Of a stretch of 64,000 bases of DNA, positions 7,795 to 48,433 are shown piece by piece. A model generated the notes under the pieces. That model saw nothing but the letters and a program-made list of their open reading frames with translations, made no database searches and was not told the origin of the DNA. The stretch lies in assembly GCF_001194135.2 (NCBI RefSeq), contig NC_068989.1, positions 29,101,987 through 29,165,986 of the forward strand, written 5' to 3'. Position 1 is the first letter of the stretch; each line of letters starts with the position of its first letter. The position numbers and the translations under genes were made by a program. The DNA is from Octopus bimaculoides (Eukaryota).

Positions 7795-8612
7795 TATGAA
7801 GTGATATTAAAAAGTTCCCAGACTAGTTATGTTTAATAAAAAATTACTTATTTACCAAAGTTTTAACATCATCTCCTTCAAAATAGTCACCTTGTGCAGC
7901 AATACACTGGTCCCAGCATTCCTGCCACTTTTGGAATCTGACCTGAAAGTCGTTTTCCATAAGCAAGCTAAGAATCTTCTGTGATTCACACTGGATCTCA
8001 ACAACGGTGTTAAAACAGTGACCTTTAAGCTGCATTTTCCTCTTGGGGAAGAGATGGAAGTCTGCTGGTGCTAAATCTGGCAAATAGGGTAGATGCAGAA
8101 GCGATACCGTGTTGTTTTTGTGAGGAGAGCTTGGTGAAGAATCTAATTCTTCGCATTCTGTAGATTCAGTTGCTTTCACCGAATGTCCTCTCTCAAATGC
8201 TTCAAAACATCACAGTAGAACACTCAATTGATGGTCTAGCCCTGGGGGACAAATTCTTGATGCACAATACCACATTTCCAGGGAGGCTCGTCTGTTTTTG
8301 AAGCGCCTGTGCCACTCAAAACATTGCGTACAGCCCATTGCCTCATCACCATAAGCATGCTCAATGTCTCTATAGCAGACTTCCCAAATTTAATGCAAAT
8401 TTTATGTTGGCTCTTTGTTCCTGTCCATGACAAAATCACAGACTACAGCATGCATGTGATCACAAAAACACAAATTTCACAACTTGCGAAGTAAACACAG
8501 CAATGTCATTCAGTATACTGTCACATGAAGGTCACCGCGAGTTCTCACTTTGCACACAGCTGTATGTTGCCATCTGTTGGCACGCTACAGAACTTTTTGA
8601 CACAACCTCGTA
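7795..8612 (-). mobile_element. Internally deleted mariner element
   Basis: TA-flanked degenerate TIRs; ORF contains HLPYLPDLAPADFHLFPK (YSPDLAPxD motif) and WQECWDQCIAAQGDYFEG. Same family as 42658-43483. Confidence 0.88.
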
Positions 8613-10518: not shown

Positions 10519-11021
10519 TATTGGGTCATCCCATAAATAATGCTGTGTTTTCAATTGCATGAAGTAAAAGTCAGAGGGAAACATGATAAACTACTTGCAT
10601 CAACTTGCTATAAAAGCAGGTAGTAATTCTAACTTCTGTTTAGTCTTAATGCAAGTTTTGAAGAGTGCAGTTAAATTTTAACAGTTATGTTTTTAATGTT
10701 ATAATGAAAGTAGCAAAGGAGCATATTTGGTATATTTTACCTTATTAGTTCAATAAAGGCAATATGTGGAGGAATATTAATGCAGTGTATGGGGATGGAA
10801 CAAGTGTAAGCCAGTGTCAACGGTGGTTCCTGAAATTCCGAGCCAATGACTACAGCTTAGAAATTAAGCCTCGTCCTGGAAGATCTGTAGAGCTCAAAGA
10901 GGATGTCCTGCAAAACCTGGTGGGGCAAAATCCCATTGTAACTGTTGGGGAGCTAGCAGAGATGCTTGAATTTGGTCATTCAACCATTTATCGACACTTG
11001 CATGCCATTGGTGAAATCTGA
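10519..11021 (+). mobile_element. Mariner 5' fragment (helix-turn-helix region)
   Basis: tattgggtcatccc terminus; ORF ...CQRWFLKFRANDYSLEIKPRPGRS...TVGELAEMLEFGHSTIYRHLHAIG. Confidence 0.85.
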
Positions 11022-11498: not shown

Positions 11499-14400
11499 GG
11501 GCTTTTTTTTTCTCTCAAACCTTCTCATCTTGCTCTGCTATTTAACACCATCATATCACATATGAAATGTCCAGCTGCTAAGCAAAGAAACTTTAATGTA
11601 TTACTAACGAGCTAACATTCTTGAGTTAAAATAACTTCGCAACCTGTAATACATTACTTTCTCCAATAACTTCTAGAATCATACCCCTTTAATTACTTGA
11701 CATAATTCTCAGGTGTTTCTATCGTTCTTTGCTTCACTATTGCCCTTTGCTGCTATTTCAATTTTCTTGTGGCAAAGCTAGCCATTTCTTCCATTTCACT
11801 ATTGCTCTTTGCTGCTATTTCAATTTTCTTGTGGAGAAACCAGCCACTTATTTGACCACTTCTGGCTGTAGATTATATAAACAACGCCTTCGCACATGGT
11901 TTATCTCAAACCTTCTCATTTCGCTCTGCTATTTGACACCATCATATCATGATGCGGAATGTCCAGCCACTAAGCTAAGAAACTTCTCTAGTTTTTAATC
12001 GTTCATCATTTTTTTCATTCATTTAATATATATTACTAACATGCTAACGTTCTTGAGTTAAGATAAATTTGTAACCTGTAATTCGTTACTTTCTCTATAT
12101 ATAGGACTAACCCAAACTATATATATATATAGGACTAATACCAGCCCATTTACTTACTTAATTTAACATTGGCATATTTATAGCTATATTTGCAGCTGCA
12201 GTAATGCTTATATTTACAATACTTAACTTACTCTCACCCCCAGTAGAAGCAACAATTTCCACATGGTTGAATGATGATAGCTTAAAAGTGAGAACAACTG
12301 TCATGACATGTCTGTTATCAAACGATCACAGAAACCTTCTTTTCAGATGCTCTCCTTCCCCATGTTCCCTCCCACATCCCTTTCTTAGTTTTCAAAGTTG
12401 GCACTGTAAATGTAGGCACATTGAAATGTATGTCTAACGAAATTGTAGAGATGCTTGAATGGAGGTGTGTTGATGTATGTTGCATTCAAGAGGTAAGGTG
12501 GAGAGGAGCTTCAGCCAAGTTCCTCATAGGCAAGTCACATAGGTATAAAATCTTCTGGGAAGGTAACAGTGATGAAGCAGGTAGTGTGGGCATACTTTTT
12601 GCAGAGAAATAGAGGGAAAAGTCATAGAGGTAGTCAGAGTGTGCGATAAAGTACTTAAGCTCAGGCTAGTCTTGCAGAATAGTATAGCTACAATTATATC
12701 TGCCTATGCCCCACCAGCATGCCTACCAAATGAACAGAAGAACCACTCTTATGATATTCTTCTTCAGGCTATCTCAAAGATGAGTGACAATGATCTCATC
12801 TTCGTGGCTGGGGATTTCAATGGGCATGTCAGACGGCAGCCTGGCATAACCCATGGTGTTCATCAAGGCTATGGAATTGGTTCAAAAAATGAAGAGGGAA
12901 CAAGGCTACTGGAGTTCTGTGATTCAAATAACCTTTTGATCTGCAACACCAACTTCAGGAAGCCAGCCAGCCACCTGATAATCTATCAATTAGGTGACTT
13001 TGTTAGCCAGATCGATTACATTCTCACCAAACAATAGGATGCATGGTTGCTCTTAAATACAAAGACCCTCTCCGGTGAAGAATGTATCCCCCAGCATAGA
13101 CTAGTCATTAGCAGGAGGATGCCAAGAAGCAGACCAATCTAGAAAAGAATGATTTGGAAGCTTAAGGACCCTTCATAAGGTCAGAGATTTAGGGACATCC
13201 TAACTGAGAAATTTGATGAGAGGGAGGAGGAGCTACAAACTTGTGACATAGACAGCTTGCTGAGTGCCACAGACCAAATCTGTGGCTGGTGCAAAGTCCC
13301 TTCCAGACTTAGGGAAATGTAGTGGTCGAACAATACTGTGGACAGGGTCATTATGGCAAAGAAACAGGCCTGGAAGAGTGAGGGCAGCAAGGAACTGTAT
13401 CAGATAGCCAGAAGGGAAGCTAGGAGACAGCTATATCCAGCCAAAAGAGAAGCAGAAAAGCAGTTTACCTATGTTCAGCACCGCGAGGACCAAAGAACTG
13501 AAGTATTTTGGATTAGAAGACAGTGTGTGAGAGAAAATTCTGATATCATAGGAGAGAAATGTGTCTGCATGGATGATGCTGCACTTGCTTTTAATGAGTC
13601 TGCAAAGAAATAGGCTTGGAGATGCCATTATGAAAGACTGCTGAACATGGAGAATGAATAGAAGGATGAGAGTTTGCCAAATGTTGACCCAATTGAAGGA
13701 CTAGCTACCCAAATCAACAGTACCCTGGTAGATAAAACAATTAAGGATATGAAGGCAGGGAAAGCCCCTGGCCCAACAGGAATCACTGATGAGATGCTTA
13801 AAATATCTGGTGGTGTGGGTTATGGTCTTGTCACCCATATTGTAAATCAGGTGATTCATGGAGGAGTCATACCCAATGACTGGTGTAGTAGCACCATAGT
13901 CAACTGCTACAAAGGTAAAGGTGATGCCTTTGATAGAAATAATTACAGAGGTATCAAATTATTGGATCAGGTGATGAAAGTTGTGGAGAGTCATGGCTCA
14001 GCTAATTAGGGAGAGAATTAGTCGAGATGAGATGCAGTTTCATTTTGTGCCCAGTAGAAGCACCACAGAGGCTATATTTCTGGTAAGACAACTGCAGGAG
14101 AAATACCTAGCCAAAGATAAACCTCTGTACCTGGCTTTCGTTGACATGGAGAAAACCTTTGACAGGGTCCCCTGCTCCCTTATCTAATGGTCAATGCGGA
14201 AACTAGGGATAGATGAATGGTTTATGAGAGCCATACAAGTTTTGTACAGTGATGCTACCAGTAAGGTGAGGGTGGGCAACAAGTACAGTGAAGAATTCAG
14301 GGTACAAGTAGGAGTTCATCAAGCTCAGCTTCCTCTTGTTTATCATAGTCCTCCAGGCAATAACAGAGGAATTCAAAATGGCTGCTCCTGGGAGCTCCTC

Positions 14401-14995
14401 TATGCTGATGACCTTGCTCTTATAGCTGAATCACTACCTGAACTAGAGAAGTTCCAGGTATGGAAGCAAAGTCTAGAATCTAAGGGCCTTAGAGTTAACT
14501 AGGCAAAAACCAGTCATAGTAAATAGGAAGGCAGACAAATCACAAATTCTTTCAGGTAGATAGCCTTGCTCAATCTGTAGAAAAGGTGTAGGCAGAAACA
14601 CCACAAGTGCACCCAGTGTAAGCTTTGGACACAAAAGGTGCAGCAACATCAGAGGAAGGTTAACAGGGAAACTAACTTTTATATGTGGGAAGTGCTCAGG
14701 TACAATAAATGCTGAAAATGTGCAGAAAATAGACTCCATCAACTGCCAGGGGGGCAAGCTAGAGGTAGTAGATAGCTTCCATCATCTAGGTGACCAAGTT
14801 AGTTGTGGCGATGGATGCTCCAAGAGTGTAGCTGTGACAATAAGATTAGGCTGGGCCAAGTTCAAAGAGCTCCTAACCCTGCTGGCAACAAAGGGCATCT
14901 CTCTCAGAGTGGAAGGCAGATTGTTTGATGCCTGTGTGCGAACAGCTATGCTGCATGGCAGTGAAATATGGGCTATGACAGCTGAGGACATGCAT

Positions 14996-15377
14996 TGTTG
15001 TTGTTGGCACTCCGTCGCTTATGACATCGAGGGTTCCAGTTGATCCGTTCAACGGAACAACCTGATTGTGAAATTAACGTGCAAGTGGTTGAGCACTCCA
15101 CAGACACGTGTACCCTTAACGTAGTTCTCGGGGATATTCAGCATGACACAGTGCGACAAGGCTGATCCTTTGAATTACAGGCACAACAGAAACAGGAAGT
15201 AAGAGTGAGAGAAAGTTGTGGTGAAAGAGTACAGCAGAGTTCGCCACCATCCCCTGCCGGAGCCTTGTGGAGCTTTAGGTGTTTTCACTCAATAAACACT
15301 CACAACGCTCGGTCTGGAAATCGAAACCGCGATCCTATGACCGCGAGTCCGCTGCCCTAACCACTGAGCCTCCAGAA
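14996..15377 (-). mobile_element. Young tRNA-derived SINE inserted in the RTE, with 13-bp TSD
   Basis: Minus-strand head ggctcagtggttagggcagcggactcgcggtcataggatcgcggtttcgatt (A/B boxes), (CAA)n tail. TSD tgaggacatgcat at 14983-14995 and 15378-15390; the RTE frame resumes after it. Confidence 0.9.
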
Positions 15378-15773
15378 TGAGGACATGCATAGGCTTGAAA
15401 GAAATGAAGCCAGAATGCTTCATTGGATGTGCAATGTCAGTGTGCATGATTGACAAAGTGTAAGCATCTTGAGAGAAAAGTTAGGCATTAGAGGAATCAG
15501 ATGTGGTGTGCAAGAGAAACGACTGTACTGGTATGGTCATGTGATGCATATGGATGTGGACAGCTGTGCAAAGAAGTGCCAATCTCTAACTGTGGAGGGA
15601 ACCTGTGGTAGAGGTAGACTCAGGAAGACATGGGACAAGGTGGTGAGGCATGATCTTTGAACTTTGAGCCTCACAGAGGCAATAACTTGTGACTGAGACC
15701 TTTGGTGATGTGCTGTGCTTGAGAGGACCAAGTGCACCTGTGCTAGTGACATGTAAAGAACGTCTTTTAAATG

Positions 15774-15940
15774 TTGGGTCTCACAGAGGCAAAGTGGCTG
15801 AGTTCCTTTCAAGTGCTGGGTCTGACGGAGGCAAAGTGGCTGAGCTCCTTTTGAGCGTTGGGCTCTACGGAGGCAAAGTAGCTGAGTTCCTTTCATGTGG
15901 TGGGTATCACAGAGAAAAGTGGCTGAGTTTGTTTCGAGTG
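15774..15940 (+). repeat. Four 42-bp tandem units in the RTE 3' region
   Basis: Units start at 15774, 15816, 15858 and 15900 (ttgggc.tcacggaggcaaagtggctgagttcctttcgagtg-like). Confidence 0.9.
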
Positions 15941-17082
15941 TTGGGCCTCATGGAGGCAATGACCAAAACGTTTGGCATTATGTTGTGCTTGAGAAAAAGA
16001 CCCATCAAGCCAACCAAAATCGCAGTTGTGGCAGATACCAGTGTCACACAAATTGACACATAAATGCACCCCAGTGTTGTGCTGGCAGCATGTAAATGTA
16101 CCCATTACACTCCAAGAGTGTTTGGCATAAGGAAGGACATTCAGCCATTGAATACCATGCCAAATTGGACTGGAATGTGGTGCGGCCTTCCAGTGTGCCA
16201 ACCCAAACCGTCCAACCCATGCCAGCATAGACAACAGACGTTAAATGATGATGATGATGTCTAAGAAATCCACTTCCAAGGCTTTTTAAGACAGTAGGGA
16301 GTAATTTAATGGTTGTTTGGCTGCTATTCTATGAAATCAGTCAGATCAAGTGACAATAAGGAGCCTACTTCATTTAAATTCTCTGAACTACTGCATTTAT
16401 GTTTAAGGGGTAAGATATTATTTTTGAAGAATGACTCAGCGTCACACTTGCTGCTTTTGTCAGTCCTTCATCCCCAGAACATTAACACACTGGTATCCTT
16501 TCTATCCTCATGTCTTCCCCACAAGTTCTGACCTCAACAGTTTAAATGAAACATTAGTGGCATGAAGTTCACTAATCTTAGAAAACTTGCATGGCCTGCA
16601 AAGGTCAGGGGCAATAGCAATTCTTCCAGACTAGGCAACAACAAAAAAATTATTTTAAAGAAAAACTTTTAACACAGAATACAAATGATTCTGGTAGCAA
16701 TGAATAAATAAACGAAAGTTTCCATTTTTTTAAAATGTCATAACAAAAAAGAAAAAAAAACTGTGCTTATTTTGTACAGTTTAGTGGTGTCCTGGCAAGA
16801 CCACAGTTAAGTGGATGGATGTTATAACTAAAACAAACACTGAAGAGTTGATAGACACACTACTACACATTGTATTTATTTAGGGTGATTAAAGTTTTCA
16901 AAACTAAAATTTTACAACATGATGGACTTCTTCCAGTCTACCTCCCAAATCCACTCTTAAGGATTTGGTCAGCCCAGTGCTATTATTGTAGAAGACACTT
17001 GCTTAAAGTTCAAACATTGGGACTGAGCTGAAAACTATGTGGCTTGTGAAGCGAATTTCTGAACTGCACAATCATGTTTGAG

Positions 17083-18254: not shown

Positions 18255-18911
18255 NNNNNNNNNNNNNNNNNNNNNNNNNNNNNNNNNNNNNNNNNNNNNN
18301 NNNNNNNNNNNNNNNNNNNNNNNNNNNNNNNNNNNNNNNNNNNNNNNNNNNNNNNNNNNNNNNNNNNNNNNNNNNNNNNNNNNNNNNNNNNNNNNNNNNN
18401 NNNNNNNNNNNNNNNNNNNNNNNNNNNNNNNNNNNNNNNNNNNNNNNNNNNNNNNNNNNNNNNNNNNNNNNNNNNNNNNNNNNNNNNNNNNNNNNNNNNN
18501 NNNNNNNNNNNNNNNNNNNNNNNNNNNNNNNNNNNNNNNNNNNNNNNNNNNNNNNNNNNNNNNNNNNNNNNNNNNNNNNNNNNNNNNNNNNNNNNNNNNN
18601 NNNNNNNNNNNNNNNNNNNNNNNNNNNNNNNNNNNNNNNNNNNNNNNNNNNNNNNNNNNNNNNNNNNNNNNNNNNNNNNNNNNNNNNNNNNNNNNNNNNN
18701 NNNNNNNNNNNNNNNNNNNNNNNNNNNNNNNNNNNNNNNNNNNNNNNNNNNNNNNNNNNNNNNNNNNNNNNNNNNNNNNNNNNNNNNNNNNNNNNNNNNN
18801 NNNNNNNNNNNNNNNNNNNNNNNNNNNNNNNNNNNNNNNNNNNNNNNNNNNNNNNNNNNNNNNNNNNNNNNNNNNNNNNNNNNNNNNNNNNNNNNNNNNN
18901 NNNNNNNNNNN
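18255..18911. other. Assembly gap (others at 44365-44738, 45405-45665, 47041-47255, 48434-48533)
   Basis: N runs, each abutting or lying close to a (TA)n tract. Confidence 1.
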
Positions 18912-18954: not shown

Positions 18955-19660
18955 ATGGGCTGAAATTTTCATAGGCTGACTATGAAGGAGTGATGCTAGA
19001 GCTGTGAAATCTTGCATACATCAATTTCAACATTTATTAATAACTTCATTGTTTCTTTCCAGATGAACTGACATCTGGCTGTTCAAAGAAGACTTTAAAC
19101 GTAACTAGTTGCAACTTCTCTTGAAAATTGACAAAATGTGGCATCCTGATGTTATCAAGTACCTGCAGAAAAACAATTTAGCCCCAATGACATTCATACT
19201 GACAACTTTATCAACAGTGCAAAAATGGTACAGCTGAATTTAGTGGGGGTAAGGGAGAGTCTTGGAGATGACCCAACATCTGGATGTCCTGCCACTGCCA
19301 AGCAAAACAGGTGACTGACTATAAATCAAATAGTCAGTACTGTTAGCATATCCTGTGAGATAGTTGAGAATATTCTGCACAATGAATTTGGTATGACAAA
19401 AGTTTCTGCTCAGTGGGTGTCATGTTTTCTGATATCTGATCAAAAGTGTACCAGGCTGATCACACCACAGGAAAATATGACATTGTTTGAGGCAGATCCA
19501 GCTGGTTTCCTTGAATGTTTCCTAACCCAGGATGAGTGCGGAGTTCATCACTTTGAGTCAGAGACAAAGAGACAATCAAACACCCCTCCTCAACTGCTCC
19601 AAAGAAGGCCAAGTTCATTTCATCTGTAGAGAAGGTAAAGACCTCAGTTTTTATCAAATG
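18949..19660 (+). mobile_element. Mariner relic (5' half)
   Basis: TIR after (TA)n; LHNEFGMTKVSAQWVS (WVP motif) and FLTQDECGVHHFESETKRQS (first catalytic D region). Confidence 0.85.
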
Positions 19661-23096: not shown

Positions 23097-23359
23097 TCTA
23101 TATGTTTCACATATATGAAACACTTTAACATTTCTATTTATTTCTAATGAACTTGCATATCCATATACAGCTGCAGATGAACTGTTTGCTTTAACAGACA
23201 ATTGTATTTTATTTCTTATTTTCAATCAAAATCATTAAATATGTTTAAATATGTGAAATTAAGAAACCAAAGTTGACAGTAATTTGGTAGATTTATTATT
23301 ATTTCTAACATTTTCTTTTTACTCCTGAACATTTAAGTCATCAGTGCATTTTCATTGAC

Positions 23360-23419
23360 CGGCGGTACATGTTCTAAAATGGGAACGATACAGAGTATCG
23401 TGAAGCGTTCCATATTTTT
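23360..23419 (+). pseudogene. U6: Internally deleted U6 snRNA pseudogene
   Basis: 23360-23395 matches the canonical metazoan U6 5' part through the ACAGAG box at 31/36. 23398-23419 tcgtgaagcgttccatattttt is an exact U6 3' end. About 39 nt of central U6 are missing. Confidence 0.88.
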
Positions 23420-23862
23420 GCACCCATGCCAATGTCGTCTCCTTCATTGGACAAGAAACTCGGCTTGCAAAGACCTGTTGGGGCAAGCAAAAGCGAAATT
23501 GTGATGGCACCTGTGCCCAGCGTCGCCTTACTGGCACTTGTGCCGCTGGCACATGTAAAGACATTCGAGCGAGATCGTTGCCAGTGCCGCTGGACTGGCT
23601 CCTGTGCAGGCGGCATGTAAAATACACCATTTTGAGCATGGCCGTTGCCAGTACCGCCAGACTGGCCTTCGTGCCGGTGGCACGTAAAAGCACCCACTAC
23701 ACTCTCAGAGTGGTTGGCGTTAGGAAGGGCATCCAGCTGTAAAAACTCTGCCAAATCAGATTGGAGCCTGGTGTAGCCATCTGGTTCACCAGTCCTCAGT
23801 CAAATCGTCCAACCCATGCTAGCATGGAAAGCAGACGTTAAACGTTGATGATGATGATGATG
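23420..23862 (+). mobile_element. RTE-type 3' tail repeat (truncated LINE or RTE-mobilised SINE body) fused to the U6 fragment
   Basis: Shares gtggttggcgttaggaagggcatccagctgt...aacccatgctagcatggaaagc..acgttaaac(GAT)n with five other copies here, and a similar terminus with the long RTE ending near 16260. Confidence 0.85.
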
Positions 23863-25379
23863 TGTCTCTCATACATTTGCCTACCAAAAAGCCCATTTTT
23901 AGTCAGCACCAAATTCCAGTGAGGCAGATAAAGCAATATGTATTGACAAAATATATTAACAGCCTGTAATTAATATACACACTAAAGCATTCATAGAGAA
24001 ACTTGTAGTTCCATGATCTTTGAATCCTAAAGTGTCTTATTTATTAAAGACACTTTAGGATTTGGGGATTTTGTTCAAGTTTTTTCCACTATGAATATGA
24101 GGTGTAATCATTTAATATAAAATATTTAAGCAGAGAAAGAGAGAGGTGGGGAGGTTTGTGATAACTACTTTTGGCTGAAGGGTTTAGTCTGCAAAAGAAA
24201 ATAACTGTTCTCATTGTTTAGCTCAATCCTGATTGTGCAAACATTTGATAGAGGATGTTCCAGTTGTGGCCATTCCAGTTTATTTTAGACAAAGAGTATT
24301 TGGGAAGGTTGTAGCTAAAATAGCTTTTATCAAGAGTTTCCTCAATCATGGCTGCCTTGGAGATAAACAGCAATAACAACTATGAACATGAGACAAATTT
24401 AAACTTGGGGAATAAAGTATTTTGCCCAATAGGACACACACACACACACATTTTAATTTTCTCGACAGTGACTTTGAAGTTTCCCTCTGGTTCAACTGGA
24501 GAATTTTAAAAAGTCATCACCACTAAGACTTTGAAGTCATTGCCAATAATATTTTATAAACTCAACTTTACTGAACAGTTTATGATTGACTCAATGTTTG
24601 CTTTTATGCCTAGAAAACATTTATTTTTTAATACCTAATTTATTATACAAAGGATGGTACAATCGTAAATCAATAACTGAGATACTTATTCAAATATATT
24701 CTTACTCAAACATGAATAAGGTAAGTCATCCTGCCTCTAGGTTGAAATTTGCGTATAGATATATGGGCTTTTGTTTGGAAATCGCTGTATGATGAATGAA
24801 AGAAATTCACAATATGGTAAACTGCCAATTTAAGAAAATCTGCCACCTTCAATGTCATGTGAAGATGTGGGAAGTTACCAAAAATAATCTGACACAGTAA
24901 AAGTGCCAATGTTCTCTGCTATGTTTGTGAGGAACTACTAAATCATGTCATTTATTTCATATTCATTTCAGCAAATAGAAAAGGGCATGATGTCAAACTA
25001 AGATTTATATTCAAAGCTGGAGTTTATATCAGTCAATTAATCAATCAATTAAATATCTAATAAAGTGCAACATCATTTATTTTATCATATCCTGCTTATG
25101 TTGTTACAGAAAACATATTGCTCAATGCAATAAAAACAAGAGATGGTGTTTGAGATGGATGTAGTGAATATCAGTTAGGAGAGGTTTGAGAGAAATAGGA
25201 GCAGGTCAAAGAGGAAGAGGAGGTGATAAGAGACAGTAATAAGGACACAATGTGAAGTGCAGGGAAATAAATGGCATCATTTATACCACCTGAGTGAATA
25301 GTGCTGCAGTTAAGAGTGATGGAAGAGTGGGTGTCAGAAGATAAGTTGTTGGGGAAAGGCTTGACAAAACCTCATTTTG

Positions 25380-28384: not shown

Positions 28385-31158
28385 ACATTCTGTGACTGGT
28401 AGACTTCACTCACCTATCCCACAAATATTTTCTAAGACTTTCCTATAGTATATTGCTGATTCCAATCCTTCCTGCAAGCTTAAGACTTCAGCAGATATAG
28501 TGGATCAAACTATTCCTTTGATTTTATTGGATTTCTGGTAGATTGGACAACAGTTTCCAAGACGATCTTTAATTCACAACAGGTGTGCTCCAGTACTCCC
28601 TTTGCCATTGTTTATATTCATTAAAGCTGCATCGTTGAATAGGAATATTTCCCAGTCTTCTGTAGGCTTTCCTTGCAGGGATGGGAATGACTGAACAAGC
28701 TTTATAACCTTCAATTTCCCCACTAAATCAGCAACAGATGTTTCTGGCAGTTTTGTACTTAGATCAATTAATTCAAAGGCCATGTCTGGATGTGACCCTG
28801 TACCACCCAGTTCAAGTGACCAACTAACTTCCTGAACTGGGACTGTTCACCTGCATTCAGTTGAGATTGTTTCTCAGATGCATGTATAGGATCTAGTTGT
28901 GGATGATCCAATTTCTGCACATATGCCAAATGATTAAGTGTTATTACATCTGTTCTTTGCTGTATCTGGAAATCGGTGTACCTGAAGTTTCCTTTCTCAA
29001 CTTTACCTGCTAGAAATCGCTGTCTGAGTGCATAATATTTCATCAAACATCTTCTCACCTGCATTGAGAAAATCATCAACATGACCACATATGATTCCAA
29101 GCAGATTTCCACCTTTTGTCAATGTGAACATGACAGTAACCAAATTTAACTGTTTACATTCTAATTTAATAAGTTCATCTTTCATGCTCAAATAAAACTG
29201 TCTTGCACTCTCCTTAAGCCCGTATAATCCATATTTGAGTTTTCAGACAGAACTTTTCTGTGTGTCACTTCCTACAGTAGTTGCCTTGTAAAAAAAACTG
29301 ACTTCATGTCTGTGGTTTTTACATTGCAATTTTTACTTGAGGCAAGAGTAAGAAATATTCTCATAACTCCTTTTCCTACAGTCAGGCTATTCTTAGGTAT
29401 AAATAACAGTTCCTCAAACCCTTGTGCCACAAGGCGAGCTCTGATGCTACCATCTTTACCTGTAATCACCCACCTTATGGTATTTTGTCTACAATCATTC
29501 ATTTCCTCATATGTTTCAAACTCTCACAGCTTTTGTAATTTGGCTTGTTTGGCTATTACACTGCTTGGATTACTATCATCCACAGTAACATGTATTTCCA
29601 CAGGTTACAGTGTGTCCAAACTTTTCCACTCTACATAGCCTAAATCAATGCATTGCATTTCATTGTTGACCTCATTGTAAACATTATACCATTTTTTATT
29701 CCTTCCTGTTGTTTTGCCTGCTCTGCTTAATATTGTAGCATCTGTCCATTCCTCAGACTCTGGCAGTTTATATTGAATGCATTGATTCACTCCGATATGA
29801 TTCTATTCTTTGCAGTGTGGATGTCCTCCATCACTATCATCTTTAGGACTATTGTCACTTTTATGGTCATGTGAAGTATCTACACCTCCTTCTTCTAACA
29901 CATTCAGTTGATCTTTTGAGATGCATAGCTGGCTGCTTGCAGAGTTTGTGTCATTGTCATTGTCATCTACCTCTGGATAACTTTCTTTTGTTTATCCGCC
30001 TACTTTGCATAGTCTGTTAGGTGACATTCTGACAAATACACTACCATGTCTAACAAACATGACTTTACCATCCTGAAAAACTACTTTACCAGGACCTAAC
30101 CACCACTCCTTTCCTTCTCTTTTGTAAAACACATTATCACCATTTTCATATATCTGTTCTGCTGCTCTCACTTTTGACCTCAAAGCCTGCCTAATCCTTC
30201 CACTAGCTTCCATTTGTTTGAATGCCTTCCGTGCCTCATGCAAAGCATTCAGATGTTTGAAGAATGTTTCACTGGTTGTGCTTCCCTCTAAAGCAGGTAA
30301 CTCTGCTTGCATTATATTTGGTACATTTGGGTTCTTGCCAAATACTAACTGGTGGCTACTGAAACCATTCCACATTTGCACTGAGTTCTTTGCCATGTTA
30401 GCCCAGGTCAACAGAGTATCAGAATCCACTTGTGAATTGTCTGCTGCTAGTTTCTCCAACATCATATCAGTGATGGCATGGACACACTCACACAAACCAT
30501 TCCAGCCATGGTACAAACACATATATTTAGGATTGAAATGATCTCACGCATTTCTTCAGAGTTGAACTGTCCTCCATTATCCATCATCAATGCCCCATGA
30601 CTTCAAACACGCCAATCCAGTTTTTCATCAAAGCATTACTCATATCACTAGGTCTCTTTCAAGCAATGAAAACTGACACTGTGTATCAGGACCACATGTC
30701 AGTTATATTTAGTATCCACTGACCTCTATACTGCTTGAAATCCATTGCTACTGTTTCATTAAATTCTCTAGCCATTTGTAATGCCACTACTGGTCGAGGT
30801 GGAGTTTTGGCATACGCTTTACTAAGTTCACACTTTGCTTCTATTTCCGACAGGTCTTCATCATAATTCTCATTCCATGCCCCAGCATCCTTTAATAAGG
30901 TTTCAAGTCTTTTCTTTGGAGGATGAGCAAACTGTCAATGGGGCTTTAACAAGTTTGTCCTACGTTTACCTGGACCAAGCTTTTCAATCGTTACATCATT
31001 CATTTCTTTTATAGAAAATATTTCTGTTTTGCTGATCAGAATGCATTAATAACCTGATGAAATAAGATTTAATGCTATGTTCTTCCCCATAATTACAGCT
31101 GTGTCATTTTCCAAGTCCATTTTTACATCTTTCAACAGTTATTAAAGTGTGTTCATCA
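28221..31158. mobile_element. Ty1/Copia LTR retrotransposon relic, probably GalEa-like, rearranged
   Basis: Minus-strand pol in Copia order: PR (MDLENDTAV), IN (MDNGGQFNSEEM, WLGPGKV), RT (RARLVAQGFEE, HVDDF), RH (FNDAA, LSLQEGLESAIYY). TG...CA ends with gggga/aggga flanks (4/5 TSD). Confidence 0.88.
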
Positions 31159-33539
31159 AGGGACTCTATCCAAAGCTTTTTCCATGTCAAAAAAAAAAAC
31201 CAAGTACAGAGGTTTATTTGGGGTAAATGCTTCTGCAGTTGCCTCACCAGGGAGGTAACATTAGTAGTATTTCACCCTGGCACAAAACCAAACTCATCCA
31301 GGCTCCCTTCCTAATAAGTTGAGCAATGACCCTTTCATCACCTGGTCCAGTAATTTGATACATCTGTAATTATTTCTGTCTAAGGCATCACCTTCACTTC
31401 TGTAGCAGTTGACTAAAATGCTGCCACACTAGTTGTTGGGTATGACTCCCTCATGGACAACCTGATAAACTATATGGGTGACTTAGCCGTATCCAATTCT
31501 GCTGGATATTTTAAGTATCTCAGCAATGATTCCTGATGGGCCAAGAGCTTTCCTTGCAATCAAAACATCTCAATCTTGTGGTTCTCATGCCACAGAACAT
31601 TGGCAAACTTCTTCCTTTCTACTATTCTCCTAACTTCCCTTCTAGCTACCTGATAAAGTTCTCTGCTACCACCACTCTTCTAGTCCTTCCAGGCTGGTTC
31701 TTCACTCTAATGGCTCTGTCTACCACATTGTTCCACCACCATGTCACCTTAGGTCTGGAAAGGTTTTTGCACCAGCCACAAATTTGGCCAGTATCCCTCA
31801 TCAAGTTGTCCCACGGGAATCTCCAGTTGTCTTCTACATTATATGCTACTATATCCTTCTCTTCATCAAATGCTTCAAGTAGAACATCCTTAAATCTCTG
31901 ACTATTCAGAAGATCCTTAAGCTTCCAAAGAAATCTTCTTTCCTGTTTTTTGGTGAGAATGTAGTCAATCCGGGTAGCGTGGCCACCAGACTGATAGGTA
32001 AACAGGTGACTGGCTGGTTTTTTGATGTTAGTATTGCAAATCATAAGGTCGTCTGCATCACAGAAATCCAGCAGCCTAGTTTCCTCCTCATTGTGGGAAC
32101 CAACTTTACAGTCGCTATGCACTTCATGGAAGTCACTTGGATGCTGCCCAACATGCCCATTGAAGTCACCAGCCATGAAAAGAAGGTCACTGTCATTTGT
32201 TGATGAGGTAATCTGCAAAAGAGTGTCATAAAATCAATCTTTCTGTTCAGTCCCAGTTGAGGAGTGTAGGCAGAATAATAGTTGCTCTTCCCACTTTGCA
32301 AAACTAGTCTGAGCTTAAGTATTCTATACTCTGGCTACCTCAATTACTTTATCAATCCACTTCTCAGCAAGAAGTATGCCCACACTATCAACCCTGTCAG
32401 TATTGGCCTAACCAGAAGATTTTATACCTATGTTCTTTGTCTGTGAGGAATGTGGCAGAAGCTCCCCTCCAGCTTATTTCTTGGATGCAACACACATCTA
32501 CATGCCTTTGTTCTAGCATCTCAACAATCTCACCAGATCTACCTTTCAATGTGCCTACATTGAATGTGCCAGTTCTAAGGGTGAGGAATGGACGGCAAGA
32601 AGGAACACAAGCATGTATCTGAAAAGAAGGTTTGCATGGACGTTTGCCAGACATATCATATAAGCTGATATAGGTTTCAATTTGCATTTAATTTACAATC
32701 ACTTATTCGCTTCACACTTGCTGCATCTACCAGGAGAAGAGGGTGTGGTATAGACCATTGCTTATACAAAGATAAAATAGTGCTGATAATTAACCCACCG
32801 GCAAGTATACTTGCCATATTTCCAATGCAAGCAAGTTAGCTATACCTTTTTACATTGTAGTACTGTGGATGCTAGTAAGCTGATGCCAGCAGGAGGGGAG
32901 AGGTGAAACAGAACTTTTTATACAGGTTTTCAATATAAAGAAAGGGTCCAAGAGAAAGACTTCTGGTATAGGTGGTGAGAGCAGGATGGGAGAGCACACA
33001 GTGAATGACCAAGACACATGGCTACCCCATGCCAGAAATAGAGTAGCAAGGGAGGCTGGATAAAATATTCAACAAGCTAAAAATGAAATTGCTAAAAAAT
33101 TAAATAGACAAGCAAACAGCTAACAAAATAGTATGGGATGACAGAGTATACATATTCATGACAGTATGGAAGAGAGCTAGCCTGGCACATTTTACTAGAA
33201 AAAATTCATTTAAATAAATAGCATTAAAACTGTGTGGTTTTAAACACAGGCATGCAGTTAAAATGAAACAAGATGACACTATAATTAAAACAAGAATAAA
33301 TTAAAATTTGGCCTATCTGAACATTTATCTATTCACCACAGACATTCAATGGCTAGGTAATCCACTGTGAGTGAAGTGAGGTAAATGAAACAATATTCAT
33401 GGAAGATGACAGGAAATTAGGGTCTTTTATGGTGCAAGTATAGCCATAAACTATGAACAACCAAGATGCATGGTTACCTTGTGCCAGAAACAGTAATAAG
33501 GGAGACAAAATAAAATATTCAGCAAACTAAAAATGAAAC

Positions 33540-35900
33540 TGCTCTGCATACTAAATCCATTGTTGTACTCATTGTTAATCCTCAACTTATTGACATCATC
33601 TCTGTACCTGGCTCAATAAGTCACACCAGCAATTCATCTACTCCTAGATTCCACAATGACCACCAGATCAGTGAGTGAGAGAACCTGTCAAAGGCTTTTT
33701 CCAGGTAGATGAATACCAAGTGTAGTGGTTGACCTTTGGCTAAATCTCCTGAAATTTCAGTACTAGGAAGAAAGTATCAGTAGTACTTCTTCCTGGCATG
33801 AAACCAAACTAGGCTCTAGCAATTTTATACCTCTGAAACTACTTCCCTTGACAGCATCTCCATTACCCTTGTATGACTATGATGTTGCAAGTAGCTGGTA
33901 ATCTGACTCCCAGTAATTTCACTTTCAATATTTTGACTCCAGTAATTTCACTGCCAGTCAATTTCCCTCCCAATATTAGAAAAAAAATGTTGAATAGAGA
34001 TAAAATAAAAAGTATATTAAAACAAAAATATTTCTAAAAGCTTCAGTAATAATGAAGGTTATGAGTGATTGCTCATAAAAAAAGCCATCTTATTTTCAGG
34101 ATTATATTGCCTAATAAATTATCTGCAGTCATTTGTTTATATCTTTATACTTTTTTCTTGGTCTCACAGGTCTCACCTCAATCAAATTCAACCTTTTTCA
34201 GTTGTGCCAAGTGTTCTTCCCTTTTCAATGCAGTAATTAATATCTATAGGTTTGGATCTGTGCAAGAACTTTGTAGTGCATTGTGATATCCCTCTAAATG
34301 ATTATCAGTGTGAAGCATATCCAATTCTGTTCTAAAGCGGACATTCCAACTATCAATAGCAAACAAAGAAGTTTTTTGTTGACTAATTCCTATGCATCCT
34401 ATGTACGATAATTCAAAATAGGACACAACTTCTTGTGGAAGATTGTCGTCATCTCCAAGATCTTCGAATTCATAAACCACATAATTGAGAGGAAGAAAAA
34501 CATCTGATTTTAATGCTAAACTCATTATCATGATGGTATCTTTCCTTAAAGCCAAATTCACATGCTTTTCTGTATACATTTTGAGATAGATGAAAAAGAC
34601 AACAAAAGATGGAAGCACTAGGAAAAACAGATAAAATGCTATTAATGCGAACTTTTTCAAAATCCATAACATTTTCAAGGCTTGGTCCTTGACGTAATTC
34701 ATTTAGCTTATTAAAAAGGCAGGTGTAAGTTTCTTGATTTTTGTTTGGAAGTAATGCAAACAATCATGGAACACACTAAATAAACCCACTTGAATATGAA
34801 GTGTGTACAACTGATAAAATATAGTCGGGGAGCACTTAAAAGTTCCACCACCAGCCCAGTGTTTTACATTCACTAAGTCATCAAGCCCTTTATCAGTTGC
34901 AAATGCAAGTAATCTGTCTACACCAGTTTCACCACTATCAAACTGCAAGTAAAGTTTGCCACTATCAAGGAACTTGTATTCATTAGGTATCTCATAATTA
35001 AATCGACTGAGGGATTGGAGTGGCACTTACTTTTGCTTGATGCCAGTTCCTTATATTGCGACTTACAGACAAAGAGGAGGGCATGTGAGCCATTTCATTT
35101 TCATCAAACTTTTCACAAGCAGTCACAATTAATGAAAGAGAAGATTCCTAGGAAGCAGCTGCTTGTGCCTTTAGGTTTGCCAAAATCTTGTGAACTTTGA
35201 GTTTTGGAGCACACAAAGAATGACAATGTTCACCAATCTTCATCGTGTGTCATAATGTGACCTCGCACTTTAAAGGACTTCATTTTGCATTTCCAATAAG
35301 TCATCATTTTGTTTCTGTGTTTCATATATGTAATTCATGTCACCCACGAACTTCCCTCTGCAGATACTGTTAAAAATGTGAGGCATGGTATACGCATATT
35401 TCTTTTTTAAGTAATGAATGAGGTAGGGATGGATCACAGGTAAACCTGTAAACTCTTTAAATAAAACACCCAAATGTGAAATGATACTGTCAGTTAGCTA
35501 AATTAAACAACTGAATGGAGAACTGAAATGATGCTTTCACTTAGCTGAATTATTCTGTAAATCAACAACAACAATAATAAGAGTTAATGAATTTCAACAT
35601 TTTTTTCTAATTCTAATTTAGGAGTGAAATTACCGGGGGAGGGGGATGTGGAGTTGACTGGCAGTCAAATTACTGGGGTCAAATTAACGGAGTCAAATTA
35701 CCCAGAACTGATGCTGCAATACAAGTTGTTGGGTATCATGCCTGCCTTACAACTTGATTGACTTATGTGTGACCAGGCCATGTCACACACCACCAGATAT
35801 TTTAAGCGTTTCAACATTAATACCTCATGAATCAGAGGCTTTCCCTGTATTCATATCCTTCATTGTTTTGTCTATCCCACTACCATCAGTAAGAATGGCT
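33540..35900 (-). mobile_element. RTE RT fragment interrupted by the MULE (33540-33890 and 35709-~35900)
   Basis: DKTMKDMNTGKA...LKISGGV upstream of the MULE; RGIKLL..FGFMPGRSTT..LEKAFDR downstream. Confidence 0.75.
33891..35708 (-). mobile_element. Mutator-like (MULE) DNA transposon with long TIRs and 11-bp TSD
   Basis: Transposase pieces GTFKCSPTIFYQLYTLH, ALLPNKNQETY, MDFE, CCLFHLSQ, NHLEGYHN. ~110-bp TIRs with gtaatttgact sub-repeats. TSD tgatgttgcaa (33880-33890) / tgatgctgcaa (35709-35719). Confidence 0.9.
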
Positions 35901-39591: not shown

Positions 39592-40598
39592 AGGCTGATC
39601 AAGATATTCTCATGGAATGTGACCAAATAAGGTTTATTTTCCAACCTAGTCCCCCTTGCAGTCCACACACTTTTTCCATCAGTGTTGCAGTGCTTGGATC
39701 CCCATTGGTGAAGAAGCTTTCATCCTGTTGGCTACAAAAGGCATCAACAGCAGCTACATCATCACCATTGTGATACTTGTTCCGAGCCAGGTGTTTTTTC
39801 ATGTTGGGGAACAGATGATAGTCAGAAAACAAAGAACAGAGAATAGGGAGGGTGATCAACCAGTTCAAAGTCACAGTCACACACAACAGTTATTGAAACC
39901 AGGACTTGATGAAACAAAACTCTTTGGATTATCTTTTTGTCTCTGACTGAAAGTGATGAGCCCAACACTCATCATGGGTTAGGAACTGCTCAAGGAAGCC
40001 AGCTGGATCGGTCTCAAACATGATGTGGTCAGCCTAGTGTGCTTTTGATCAGGCATCCAAAAGAGATGGCACCCACCCCAGTAGAAACCTTCATCATGCC
40101 AAGTTCATTGTGTAGAATATTCTCAACAATCTCACAGGATATGCTAATAACATTGGCTATATGATTTATAATCAGTTGCCTCTCATCCATCATCATGTGG
40201 TGAACACGATCAATGTTTTCCTCAGTGGTGGCAGTTGTAGGACGTCCAGATGTTGAGTCATCTTCAGGACTCTCCCTTCCCCTCCTAAATTCAACTGTCC
40301 ACTTTTGCACTGTTGATAAAACTGGAGCACCACCTCCTAATGTAGAAACCACATCAGCATGAATGTCGCTGGGGGCTAAAGCTATTTTCTGCAGGTACTT
40401 CATAATACCAGGATGCCAAATTTTGTCAATTTGCAAGAGAAGTTGCTACTAGCTACTTTTGAAATAACTAGTAGCAATGAGTTTACCTGGAAAAAACAAT
40501 GCAGTTCTTATTGAGAACAGTTGAAATTAATGTAGGCAAGATTTTACAGCTCTAGCATCACTCGTTCAGAGTCAGCCTATGAACTTTTCAGCGCACAC
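39592..40598 (-). mobile_element. Mariner relic with N- and C-terminal transposase fragments
   Basis: STVQKWTVEFRRGRESPEDDSTSGRP...ILHNELGMMKVS and SDYHLFPNMKKHL; TIR ctgaaaagttcataggctga. Confidence 0.9.
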
Positions 40599-43999: not shown

Positions 44000-44332
44000 C
44001 GTGGCCGTTGCCAGTGCCACCTGGCTGGCCTTCGTGGGATTTTCGAGCGAGATTGTTGCCAGTGCCCCTGGACTGGCTCTTGTGCGGGTGGCACATAAAA
44101 TGCACCATTTTGAGCGTGTCCGTTGCCAGTACCGCCTGACTGGCCTTCGTGCGGGTGGCACGTAAAAGCACCCACTACACTCTAAGTGGTTGGCATTAGG
44201 AAGGGCATCCATCTGTAGAAACTCTGCCAAATCAGATTGGAGCCTGGTGTAGCCATCTGGTTTCACCAGTCCTCGGTCAAATCGTCCAACCCATGCTAGC
44301 ATGGAAAGCGGACGTTAAACGATGATGATGAT
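44000..44332 (+). mobile_element. RTE-type 3' tail repeat
   Basis: Tandem hairpin modules plus (GAT)n tail. Confidence 0.85.
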
Positions 44333-44782
44333 ATATCATTCAACCACTACCGTGGCTAAATATANNNNNNNNNNNNNNNNNNNNNNNNNNNNNNNNNNNN
44401 NNNNNNNNNNNNNNNNNNNNNNNNNNNNNNNNNNNNNNNNNNNNNNNNNNNNNNNNNNNNNNNNNNNNNNNNNNNNNNNNNNNNNNNNNNNNNNNNNNNN
44501 NNNNNNNNNNNNNNNNNNNNNNNNNNNNNNNNNNNNNNNNNNNNNNNNNNNNNNNNNNNNNNNNNNNNNNNNNNNNNNNNNNNNNNNNNNNNNNNNNNNN
44601 NNNNNNNNNNNNNNNNNNNNNNNNNNNNNNNNNNNNNNNNNNNNNNNNNNNNNNNNNNNNNNNNNNNNNNNNNNNNNNNNNNNNNNNNNNNNNNNNNNNN
44701 NNNNNNNNNNNNNNNNNNNNNNNNNNNNNNNNNNNNNNTAAGCAATAAGAATATATTGCTAAAATGAATGTTTACATTCTAA

Positions 44783-45404: not shown

Positions 45405-45665
45405 NNNNNNNNNNNNNNNNNNNNNNNNNNNNNNNNNNNNNNNNNNNNNNNNNNNNNNNNNNNNNNNNNNNNNNNNNNNNNNNNNNNNNNNNNNNNNNNN
45501 NNNNNNNNNNNNNNNNNNNNNNNNNNNNNNNNNNNNNNNNNNNNNNNNNNNNNNNNNNNNNNNNNNNNNNNNNNNNNNNNNNNNNNNNNNNNNNNNNNNN
45601 NNNNNNNNNNNNNNNNNNNNNNNNNNNNNNNNNNNNNNNNNNNNNNNNNNNNNNNNNNNNNNNNN

Positions 45666-45709: not shown

Positions 45710-46653
45710 CATATTATACTTATATGTGTAAAAAAAATCTCATCACGCAATCAAACTAATGAAAGAGCCTCTACCTCGTTGCTCCTTGACACGCTAAAAA
45801 TAACAGCCAATGTATCCCCCTACCTAAGTCACACACCCACTGTACGTAAAGTCCTACATTATCTCTAAAAAGATAGTTTGCTGAAAACTGGAATGTCTTT
45901 GATGATAGGTTTGCTGTATCAAGGTTGATTTGAGTCTAAATAACAACAACATTATGGTAAATTTCTATATTAATACCCGCACGATTTTCACTAAGAAAAA
46001 GAAGCAAAAAATTGGATTCATTCGGTGGAATCAAGTACCCTGACCTCCTAAAATGCTGCAAATCCCTTATTTTGCTTAGGAAAAAATGTGGGTGAGGCAA
46101 GGGGGTATCCCCTCACCCCAGGAATCATTGGAATTTTTTTCGTTGAATAAATTCCTGCAATCTCCTAATATGCAACAAAACCCTTTGTGGATGGGTAATA
46201 TCAAATAATTCAATCACAACATATATTTAAATTAAGCATGAAAAAAATTGAAATATTATCAAATTTAAATATTAGAAATTATTTTATTATAGCTTACAAA
46301 TAACACTATACTTATTTAAGTAGAATTTGGCTAATTTACTACCTTAAATACAGAGAAAAAGTGACTAATTAGACAAACTTACAAATTTGCTGAATAGTTT
46401 TGTACAATAAATTTAAAAGATAAGAACTGTAAAGAGCAATAAATTAGAAGAACTGGCATTCTTTGCTGCAATATTTTAAGTAAAATGTTTCTTATTCTTT
46501 ACTTTACTAGAAGTAATAGCTTGTCCTATACTTTTACAGGTAGAATAACATGTCCTGCACTTTTCCAGGTTTATAATCTTAAGAATATTACATTTCATGC
46601 TCGCATTTTTCCATGTAACATATATTATGTATAATATATATATATATATATAT

Positions 46654-47040
46654 CAGCTTGCGAAGACCTGTTGGGGCAAGCGAAAGCGAAATCGTGATGG
46701 CACTTGTGCCTAGCGTCACCTTCCTGGCACTTGTGCTGGTGGCACGTGTAAAGACATTCGAGCGAGATCGTTGTCAGTGCTGCCGGACTGGCTCCTGTGC
46801 AGGTGGCATGTAAAATACACCATTTTAAGCATGGCCGTTGCCAGTACCGCCTGACTGGCCTTCGTGCCGGTGGCACATAAAAGCACCTACTAAACTCTCG
46901 GAGTGGTTGGCATTAGGAAGGGCATCCAGCTGTAGAAACTCTGCTAAATCAGATTGGAGCCTGGTGTAGCCATCTAGTTCACCAGTCCTCAGTCAAATCG
47001 TCCAACTCATGCTAGCATGGCAAGCAGACATTAAACGATG
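46654..47040 (+). mobile_element. RTE-type 3' tail repeat
   Basis: Colinear with 23460-23850. Confidence 0.88.

Positions 47041-48384: not shown

Positions 48385-48433
<49 letters not shown>

What the first reader, a model, noticed from the sequence alone, without database searches (positions are those of the whole stretch)
23360..23862. U6 snRNA-headed RTE retro-chimera: possible U6-derived SINE
Seen: a U6 5' segment (31/36, ending at ACAGAG) joined to a perfect 22-nt U6 3' end. The ~39-nt centre, which carries the ISL and the U4/U2-pairing region, is deleted. The terminal TTTTT runs directly into an RTE-type tail ending in (GAT)n. Established: mammalian U6/L1 chimeras join exactly after the U6 oligo-U; snRNA-headed SINEs are rare. 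Inference: either a one-off U6/RTE chimera, implying snRNA-LINE joining in a non-L1 invertebrate system, or one member of a U6-headed SINE family. No TSD was found.
Basis: partly seen in the sequence, partly recalled or inferred. Interest (0 to 1): 0.75.

Follow-up and report, generated by a model that had tools for sequence, protein, structure and literature searches.

The report
U6–RTE-tail chimeric retrocopy in octopus
A dead, internally deleted copy of the U6 spliceosomal RNA is fused head-to-tail to a copy of a very common octopus retrotransposon-dependent repeat, most likely as a one-off by-product of reverse transcription of a kind already described in vertebrates.

Summary
Window 23360-23395 matches U6 nt 11-46 (31/36). 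Window 23398-23419 matches U6 nt 86-107 (22/22, ending TTTTT). U6 nt 47-85 are missing. The T5 runs with no spacer into a 443-nt repeat that ends in (GAT)n.

The repeat belongs to an abundant Octopus family. Its last ~190 nt are homologous to the 3' end of an APE+RT LINE in the same window, which also ends in (GAT)n.

The best reading is a single U6/LINE-dependent chimeric retrocopy. The LINE reverse transcriptase copied the repeat RNA and then jumped to the 3' end of U6 RNA. RNA ligation before reverse transcription is the alternative route.

U6 chimeras with RTE and L2 LINEs, often with 5'-truncated U6 and little or no TSD, are already published for lizard, opossum and platypus (PMC4476161). 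The kind is therefore known; an invertebrate case would be a modest extension.

I found no evidence for a U6-headed SINE family. There was no second copy of either junction in about 125 kb of octopus DNA or in the protein libraries. One independent copy that reaches the same 5' end has no U6.

I found no TSD.

The parts
23344..23359 (+). Possible remnant of the U6 5' stem (GTGC...) or simply 5' flank; boundary uncertain
   Evidence: Rfam alignment starts at 23344 with GUGC = model positions 1-4, but the following 12 nt do not match. The pairwise alignment needs two gaps.
23360..23395 (+). U6 snRNA nt 11-46, ending with ACAGAG
   Evidence: 31/36 identity to human-type U6, E=1e-5; Rfam U6 model positions up to 44.
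23396..23397 (+). Deletion junction filler 'TA'. The A matches U6 nt 85 of a Drosophila-type U6; the T is unmatched.
   Evidence: Alignments to the two U6 versions.
23398..23419 (+). U6 snRNA nt 86-107, the exact 3' end including the T5
   Evidence: 22/22 identity, E=3e-6; unique in the window.
23420..23505 (+). 5' unique region of the repeat family (first part of the 'tail')
   Evidence: Shared from about 23457 with the copy at window 46653-47037. Shared from 23422 with an exonised copy in the O. bimaculoides protein A0A0L8GAX3.
23506..23689 (+). About three degenerate ~67-nt internal repeats of the family
   Evidence: Direct repeat 23564-23622 / 23631-23689, spacing 67, 75% identity. Self-hits in BLAST. 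Present in other copies.
23671..23845 (+). LINE-homologous 3' domain of the family
   Evidence: 74% identical to window 16079-16259, the 3' end of the APE+RT LINE. 80-95% identical to at least 12 other copies in the window and in O. vulgaris and O. bimaculoides loci.
23846..23862 (+). Terminal (GAT/TGA)n microsatellite
   Evidence: TRF period 3, 5.7 copies, 100%. The same terminal repeat is on sibling copies and on the LINE.
12307..16259 (+). Context: degenerate ~4-kb APE+RT LINE whose 3' end carries the homologous tail and (GAT)n. It stands for the kind of partner that supplies the reverse transcriptase.
   Evidence: APE domain PF14529 at 12585-13034. Homologues of the C-terminal ORF carry PF00078. 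42-nt tandem repeat in the 3' UTR and (ATG)5 at 16245-16259. Tail alignment.

Best explanation
This is a single, dead chimeric retrocopy. Steps 1 to 5 below are inferred; only the anatomy is shown.

1. An RTE-like LINE reverse transcriptase began target-primed reverse transcription on the (GAT)n / 3'-tail end of an RNA of the abundant octopus repeat. This repeat is a LINE-dependent, apparently headless SINE-like element.
2. It copied all 443 nt, probably to the RNA's own 5' end.
3. It then continued on the 3' oligo-U end of a U6 snRNA, by an end-to-end template jump. Alternatively, U6 had already been ligated to that RNA.
4. While copying U6 it skipped nt 85-47, a segment that a computed fold closes with pairs G46:C87 and A47:U86. 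Alternatively, that segment was deleted later in the genome.
5. cDNA synthesis or integration ended near U6 nt 11.

The product has no U6 function, because the ISL, the AGC triad and the U4/U2 pairing region are gone. It has no evident promoter of its own.
For: - U6 lies in sense orientation directly 5' of the repeat. The join falls exactly after the U6 T5 with zero spacer. This is the signature of U6/LINE chimeras (PMC4476161, PMC6789731, PMC11838501).
- The repeat runs to its own 3' terminus with (GAT)n. It shares its 3' domain with an APE+RT LINE in the same window that ends the same way.
- Many headless copies of the same family exist: at least 15 in about 125 kb. That is what is expected if only a rare copy underwent a jump, the argument of Kojima 2015 (PMC4494074).
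- An independent copy (O. bimaculoides A0A0L8GAX3) loses homology within 2 nt of the same point and has no U6 before it. This suggests the join sits at or near the element's natural 5' end.
- Published non-L1 U6 chimeras (RTE, L2) likewise have 5'-truncated U6 and no or tiny TSDs.
- The deletion ends abut a predicted helix (pair probabilities 0.76 and 0.71). Only 1.7% of possible deletions of 20 nt or more do so.
Against: - No TSD brackets the whole unit, so a single integration event is not proven.
- No empty orthologous or paralogous site could be obtained.
- The U6 5' segment is more diverged (5/36 against human-type U6) than the tail is from its siblings (5-7% pairwise).
- The structural argument for reverse-transcriptase skipping rests on a computed fold of a human-type U6. 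It is weaker for a Drosophila-type U6 (pair probability 0.31) and does not match the textbook ISL/telestem exactly.
- The claim that the element's natural 5' end lies at 23420 rests on one protein-level comparison, which could coincide with an exon boundary.
- RTE clade membership of the partner LINE was not rigorously shown.
Confidence: 0.68

Rival explanations
1. It is one member of a U6-headed SINE family. An ancestral U6+repeat chimera with the internal U6 deletion became a master copy and was amplified by the RTE-like LINE.
For: - The architecture (small-RNA head + body + LINE tail + microsatellite) is SINE-like.
- If the join is at the natural 5' end of the repeat, this is the kind of 5' addition that founded SINEU families.
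- SINEU families tolerate internal oligo-T and lack a known promoter (PMC4494074).
- A 2026 O. vulgaris repeat annotation lists one 'SINE/U' family (369 kb) and one 'SINE/U-L1' family (53 kb) whose sequences I could not see.
Against: - No second copy of the head or of either junction in the window or in about 61 kb of O. vulgaris and O. bimaculoides DNA.
- None among 5.8 billion or 1.84 billion predicted proteins in two reading frames.
- The only other copy reaching the same 5' end has no U6.
- The T5 between head and body would terminate Pol III, and animal U6 promoters are upstream and external (PMC4494074), so the head gives no transcriptional advantage.
- Headless copies are abundant.
- These tests sample only about 0.005% of the genome, so a low-copy family is not excluded.
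Confidence: 0.12
2. Two independent events lie next to each other. Either a U6 pseudogene (or a DNA-level U6 fragment) was already there and a full-length copy of the repeat later integrated exactly at its 3' end, or the reverse order.
For: No common TSD was found. If 23420 is the repeat's natural 5' end, an ordinary full-length insertion would also end there. The U6 5' part looks somewhat more diverged than the tail.
Against: - Zero-nucleotide adjacency exactly at the end of the U6 oligo-T, in the same orientation, is what chimeras show. It is very unlikely for unrelated insertions.
- No poly(A) or other tail follows the U6 T5, and none is seen after the (GAT)n. A free-standing U6 retropseudogene would need one.
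- LINEs other than L1 (L2, RTE) were found to form U6 pseudogenes only as chimeras (PMC4476161).
Confidence: 0.12
3. Assembly artefact or chance resemblance. The join does not exist in the animal, or the U6 similarity is accidental.
For: The assembly is gap-rich (five N runs in the window) and repeats are prone to mis-joins. Reads could not be consulted.
Against: A 22/22 match plus a 31/36 match to U6, in the right order and orientation, is far beyond chance. Both junctions lie in gap-free sequence more than 4 kb from the nearest N run. A mis-join would not land exactly on the U6 3' end.
Confidence: 0.04

Closest known systems
U6/LINE chimeric retrocopies of non-L1 LINEs: U6-RTEX-2 (Anolis), U6-RTE_Mdo and U6-RTESINE1 (opossum), U6-L2 and U6-Mon-1 (platypus); Doucet et al. 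2015, PMC4476161
   Same: Sense U6 joined at its oligo-U end to the 3' part of a LINE or of a SINE mobilised by it. U6 is often 5'-truncated. The LINE ends in a simple repeat. TSDs are absent or 1-9 bp. The partner is a 'stringent' LINE that needs its own 3' tail.
   Different: The host is a mollusc; all published cases I found are vertebrates. The U6 here also has a 39-nt internal deletion. The repeat part may be full length rather than 5'-truncated.
Mammalian U6/L1 chimeras (template switching, or RtcB ligation; PMC6789731, PMC11838501)
   Same: The join falls exactly after the U6 oligo-U, in the same orientation, with the LINE-type 3' end retained.
   Different: In L1 chimeras the U6 is predominantly full length, clear TSDs and poly(A) are present, and the L1 part is 5'-truncated. 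Here there is no poly(A), no TSD, a truncated and deleted U6, and a different LINE clade.
SINEU families (U1/U2 snRNA-headed SINEs of crocodilians; Kojima 2015, PMC4494074)
   Same: snRNA-derived 5' part added to a LINE-dependent element, probably by template switch. Internal oligo-T. No recognisable promoter. SINEU-3 shows an internal deletion of the snRNA.
   Different: SINEU are families: many copies share junctions and deletions, and no headless LINE partner shares the tail. Here only one copy is known, headless copies abound, and the head is U6, not U1/U2.
Tripartite chimeric pseudogenes of Magnaporthe grisea (double template jumps; PMC2104539)
   Same: More than one discontinuity on the cDNA, explained by successive template jumps of a LINE reverse transcriptase outside mammals.
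   Different: Fungal host, different RNAs. Here the second discontinuity lies within the same U6 RNA.

Membership tests
U6/LINE chimeric retrocopy | U6 in sense orientation immediately 5' of a LINE or LINE-dependent sequence | tested here: met
   U6 segments at 23360-23419 (+), repeat at 23420-23862 (+).
U6/LINE chimeric retrocopy | Join located at the mature U6 3' oligo-U end, without spacer | tested here: met
   U6 nt 107 (last T of the T5) = 23419; the repeat begins at 23420.
U6/LINE chimeric retrocopy | The 3' partner reaches the LINE-type 3' terminus recognised by the reverse transcriptase | tested here: met
   The 3' domain is homologous to the 3' end of the APE+RT LINE at 16079-16259, and both end in (GAT)n.
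U6/LINE chimeric retrocopy | One TSD flanking the whole chimera | tested here: not met
   No shared string of 8 nt or more; only chance-level 6-mers. Published RTE/L2 U6 chimeras also lack TSDs or have 1-9 bp, so this weakens the proof without excluding membership.
U6/LINE chimeric retrocopy | Whole unit absent together from an empty orthologous site | not testable with these tools
   No gene anchor in the window. Flanks are unique in the DNA at hand.
snRNA-headed SINE family (SINEU-like) | Multiple dispersed copies sharing the head-body junction and the internal deletion | tested here: inconclusive
   Zero further copies in 64 kb + 61 kb of octopus DNA, in protein libraries and in metagenome/prokaryote contigs, which hold no octopus DNA. 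One other copy reaching the 5' end lacks U6. A genome-wide count was not possible.
snRNA-headed SINE family (SINEU-like) | No abundant headless partner sharing the same 3' terminus (Kojima's argument against independent chimeras) | tested here: not met
   Headless copies with the same 3' terminus are abundant.
Functional U6 snRNA gene | Full U6 sequence and structure (ACAGAGA, AGC triad, ISL) reaching the Rfam gathering score | tested here: not met
   15.2 bits against a gathering score of 44; only model positions 1-44 matched. nt 47-85 are absent.
RTE-clade LINE as partner | Single ORF with APE endonuclease + RT, short simple-repeat 3' end, phylogenetic placement in RTE | tested here: inconclusive
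   APE domain PF14529. RT PF00078 in a homologue. (GAT)n 3' end. The nearest named relative is 'craniofacial development protein 2-like'; that this gene derives from RTE/BovB is my own knowledge. RTE-BovB is reported as expanded in octopus (PMC8967140). No phylogeny was made.

The most novel reading that the evidence does not exclude
The locus is one copy of a U6-derived SINE family in octopus, defined by a shared 39-nt internal U6 deletion and a fixed U6|gcacccatgcc junction. It might be the unexamined 'SINE/U' family of the 2026 O. vulgaris annotation. As far as I know, that would be the first SINE family with a U6 head, and in an invertebrate with an RTE-type partner.
Probability: 0.1. Interest if true: 0.6.

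Novelty: new member of a known kind. Interest (0 to 1): 0.25.

Why it matters
If confirmed as a single chimera, it extends to a mollusc the published conclusion that joining LINE-dependent cDNA to U6 is a general property of non-LTR retrotransposons (Doucet 2015). It also gives a small natural example of how a small-RNA 'head' can be put on the 5' end of a LINE-dependent element, which is the first step in SINE birth. It has no evident consequence for the host: the U6 part is non-functional and the region is repeat-rich with no gene. It would become notable only if many copies share the two junctions.

Tried and rejected
So I obtained no read depth, no junction reads and no RNA-seq.
- **Collection scans.** Metagenome contigs: the deletion junction gave 0 hits. 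A 19-mer from the repeat's 5' region gave 15 contigs, all unrelated chance matches, five of them the same bacterial gene. Prokaryote genome contigs: the U6|tail junction and a tail 24-mer both gave 0 hits. Viral contigs: a tail 19-mer gave 0 hits. These collections evidently hold no octopus DNA, so the negatives say little.
- **Protein route to more octopus DNA.** Three homologue searches yielded only three proteins on long octopus contigs (loci L001, L002, L018). UniRef-only O. bimaculoides proteins and window ORFs are not on record.
- **Empty site.** There is no host gene in the window to anchor an orthologue. The flanks are not part of any repeat seen elsewhere, so no paralogous empty site is available.
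- **tRNA or other small-RNA head.** ARAGORN found none in the window. Rfam found nothing at gathering score in the window or the three loci.
- **SNORD123/SNORD14.** The weak matches at 23844-23907 are rejected as (GAT)n = UGAUGA look-alikes.
- **Octopus U6 gene.** I did not find a real one for calibration, so the comparisons use human- and Drosophila-type U6 typed from my own knowledge.

Full report
**1. Observation**

- A human-type U6, typed from my own knowledge, aligns in two blocks.
  - nt 11-46 match window 23360-23395 at 31/36, ending in ACAGAG.
  - nt 86-107 match 23398-23419 at 22/22, ending in TTTTT.
- Nucleotides 47-85 (39 nt) are absent. They include A47 of the ACAGAGA box, the AGC triad and the internal stem-loop.
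- With a Drosophila-type U6 the 3' block is 23 nt, and one T (23396) is left unexplained.
- These were the only significant U6 matches in about 125 kb of octopus DNA, and both junction strings are unique in the window.
- Rfam recognises only the 5' half, at 15.2 bits against a gathering score of 44. Nothing in the window reaches any gathering score.
- It is a U6 relic, not a gene.
- The 5' limit is uncertain (23344-23360). The first 10 nt of U6 are missing or unrecognisable.

**2. The tail**

The 443 nt from 23420 to 23862 are a copy of a very abundant repeat.
- The window holds further copies at 8-203, 44042-44332, 46653-47037, 47333-47476 (-) and 55956-56089, at 79-95% identity.
- 20-kb loci of O. 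vulgaris (L001, L002) and O. bimaculoides (L018) hold about a dozen more.
- Translated pieces hit only Octopus proteins.
- The gap pattern resembles that of the O. bimaculoides assembly, so the window is probably O. bimaculoides. This is an inference.

The repeat has four sections.

| Section | Window coordinates | Evidence |
|---|---|---|
| 5' unique part | 23420-23505 | |
| About three degenerate 67-nt repeats | 23506-23689 | |
| ~175-nt 3' domain | 23671-23845 | |
| (GAT)n | 23846-23862 | |

- The 3' domain is 74% identical to 16079-16259. That stretch is the 3' end of a degenerate ~4-kb LINE on the same strand.
- The LINE has an APE domain (PF14529) and homologues of its C-terminal ORF carry an RT domain. 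It has a 42-nt tandem repeat in the 3' UTR and a terminal (ATG/GAT)5.
- A second APE fragment in the window has 'craniofacial development protein 2-like [O. bimaculoides]' as its best named relative.
- RTE-BovB LINEs are reported as expanded in octopus (PMC8967140).
- 'RTE-type tail' is therefore reasonable, although I made no phylogeny.
- No tRNA-like or other small-RNA head was found on any copy.

**3. Where the join sits in the repeat**

- Most copies are shorter at the 5' end. In the subject's coordinates their 5' ends fall at positions 121, 178, 200, 201, 225, 240, about 332-337 (four copies), 368, 416 and 436.
- Only one genomic copy (46653) reaches to about 23457. It is preceded by (TA)n.
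- A full HMMER pass over 1.84 billion representative proteins with the + frame 23404-23739 found one O. bimaculoides gene model (A0A0L8GAX3, 'EGF-like domain-containing protein'). It contains an exonised copy of 23422-23667.
- Homology starts at the residue encoded by 23422-23424. The residue before (G against C) is compatible with shared 'gc' at 23420-23421.
- What precedes is ...EIEIKLNSTTG. This is not the translation of U6 (SVPYF) and it matches nothing else in hand.
- So a second, independent copy ends its similarity within about 2 nt of the U6 join and has no U6.
- The simplest reading is that 23420 is at or near the natural 5' end of the repeat RNA. An exon boundary at the same spot is the alternative. 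This is an inference from a single protein.

**4. Mechanism**

*Shown:* the sense orientation, the join exactly after the U6 T5 with no spacer, and a repeat complete to its LINE-type 3' terminus.

*Inferred:*
- The RTE-like reverse transcriptase primed on the (GAT)n/3' tail of the repeat RNA and copied it.
- It then continued on the 3' end of U6 RNA.
- End-to-end template jumping suits a join at the template's 5' end.
- Ligation of the U6 2',3'-cyclic phosphate end to a 5'-OH RNA by RtcB (PMC6789731) is the alternative, and would suit a cleaved RNA better.

*The second discontinuity (U6 nt 86 to 46):*
- In a computed fold of human-type U6, G46:C87 and A47:U86 pair with probabilities 0.76 and 0.71. 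The lost segment is thus the hairpin domain they close.
- Only 1.7% of all possible deletions of 20 nt or more have ends abutting a likely pair.
- This fits a reverse transcriptase skipping across the base of a structure.
- The argument is weaker for a Drosophila-type U6 (0.31). The fold is not the experimentally known U6 structure, and a later genomic deletion is equally possible.

*The missing first ~10 nt of U6 and the lack of a TSD:*
- These match published non-L1 U6 chimeras.
- The opossum U6-RTE_Mdo and U6-RTESINE1 chimeras are 5'-truncated with no obvious TSD.
- The platypus U6-L2 chimeras are nearly all 5'-truncated, with TSDs of 1-9 bp (PMC4476161).

**5. Family or one-off?**

- What I could test is negative.
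  - No other head or junction in the window or the three loci.
  - None in predicted proteins in two frames.
  - The one other copy reaching the same 5' end is U6-less.
- Headless copies with the same tail are abundant. By Kojima's reasoning for SINEU (PMC4494074), that is what independent rare chimeras look like, not a head-defined family.
- The T5 between head and body would stop Pol III. A U6 head brings no internal promoter, because vertebrate snRNA promoters are upstream.
- Against a firm dismissal:
  - SINEU families also carry internal oligo-T and no known promoter.
  - A 2026 O. vulgaris annotation lists a 'SINE/U' family of 369 kb and a 'SINE/U-L1' family of 53 kb, whose sequences I could not inspect.
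- I put the family reading at about 0.1.

**6. Other rivals**

- Independent adjacent insertions would need an unrelated event to land exactly on the last T of U6 in the same orientation.
- They would also need a free-standing U6 retrocopy without any tail. LINEs other than L1 were found to give U6 pseudogenes only as chimeras.
- An assembly mis-join cannot be excluded without reads. The region is gap-free, and a mis-join would not pick the exact U6 3' end.

**7. Comparison and novelty**

- U6 chimeras with RTE-clade LINEs (three with RTEX-2 in Anolis), with L2, and with SINEs mobilised by them (Mon-1, AnolisSINE2, RTESINE1) are published.
- My literature searches found no invertebrate example. 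That is only absence of evidence in the held library.
- This is therefore a new member of a known kind.
- Its two minor peculiarities are the internal U6 deletion and the possible join at the repeat's natural 5' end.
- Interest is low to moderate. The element is old: 5-7% pairwise divergence from sibling copies, and 5 mismatches in 58 U6 positions. It is non-functional and lies in a gene-poor, repeat-rich stretch.

**8. Limits**

- Not done: a genome-wide copy count, an orthologous empty site, junction reads, RNA-seq, the true octopus U6 sequence, and a LINE phylogeny.

Noticed in passing
window 12307-16259 (+): Degenerate ~4-kb APE+RT LINE with a 42-nt x4.7 tandem repeat in its 3' UTR (15764-15959). 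Its 3' end is homologous to the tail of the finding and ends in (ATG/GAT)5.
   Followed up: partly
window 31649-32687 (-): Second LINE fragment with an APE domain. Its best named relative is 'craniofacial development protein 2-like [Octopus bimaculoides]'.
   Followed up: partly
window 24023-24062: Perfect 16-bp inverted repeat with an 8-nt loop, about 160 bp 3' of the element. Nature unknown (small hairpin or MITE end?).
   Followed up: no
window 18255-18911, 44365-44738, 45405-45665, 47041-47255, 48434-48533: Five N runs, most flanked by (TA)n-type microsatellite. A similar gap pattern is seen in the O. bimaculoides locus L018, which suggests the window comes from that assembly.
   Followed up: partly
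window 23844-23907: Weak Rfam matches to SNORD123 and SNORD14 (E about 0.6), caused by the (GAT)n tract mimicking a UGAUGA C box. Judged to be chance.
   Followed up: yes
protein P0016 (UniRef A0A0L8GAX3, O. bimaculoides), aa 111-191: A gene model for an EGF-like domain protein contains an exonised copy of the 5' part of the repeat family. It is probably an annotation artefact or a true exonisation.
   Followed up: partly
protein P0018 (721 aa, source not looked up): A protein made of about fourteen ~52-aa tandem units, weakly similar (E=1e-4) to the translated 67-nt repeats of the family. This hints at a satellite-like array built from that unit.
   Followed up: no
L001 9920-12515 (-), O. vulgaris OX597822.1: Three same-strand copies of the tail family within 2.6 kb. 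No tandem repeat was detected by TRF, so they are probably independent insertions or a diverged local duplication.
   Followed up: partly
window 7847-8209, 10749-11018, 19315-19626, 40032-40445, 47797-48573: Several ORF fragments that I judged, by eye only, to be mariner/Tc1-like transposase. A retroelement integrase-like ORF (29995-30543) and a MULE-like ORF (34247-35026) were also read by eye. Pfam gave no family for the ORFs I scanned (29995-30543, 34247-34702, 40032-40445). The window is almost entirely transposon-derived, with no evident host gene.
   Followed up: no
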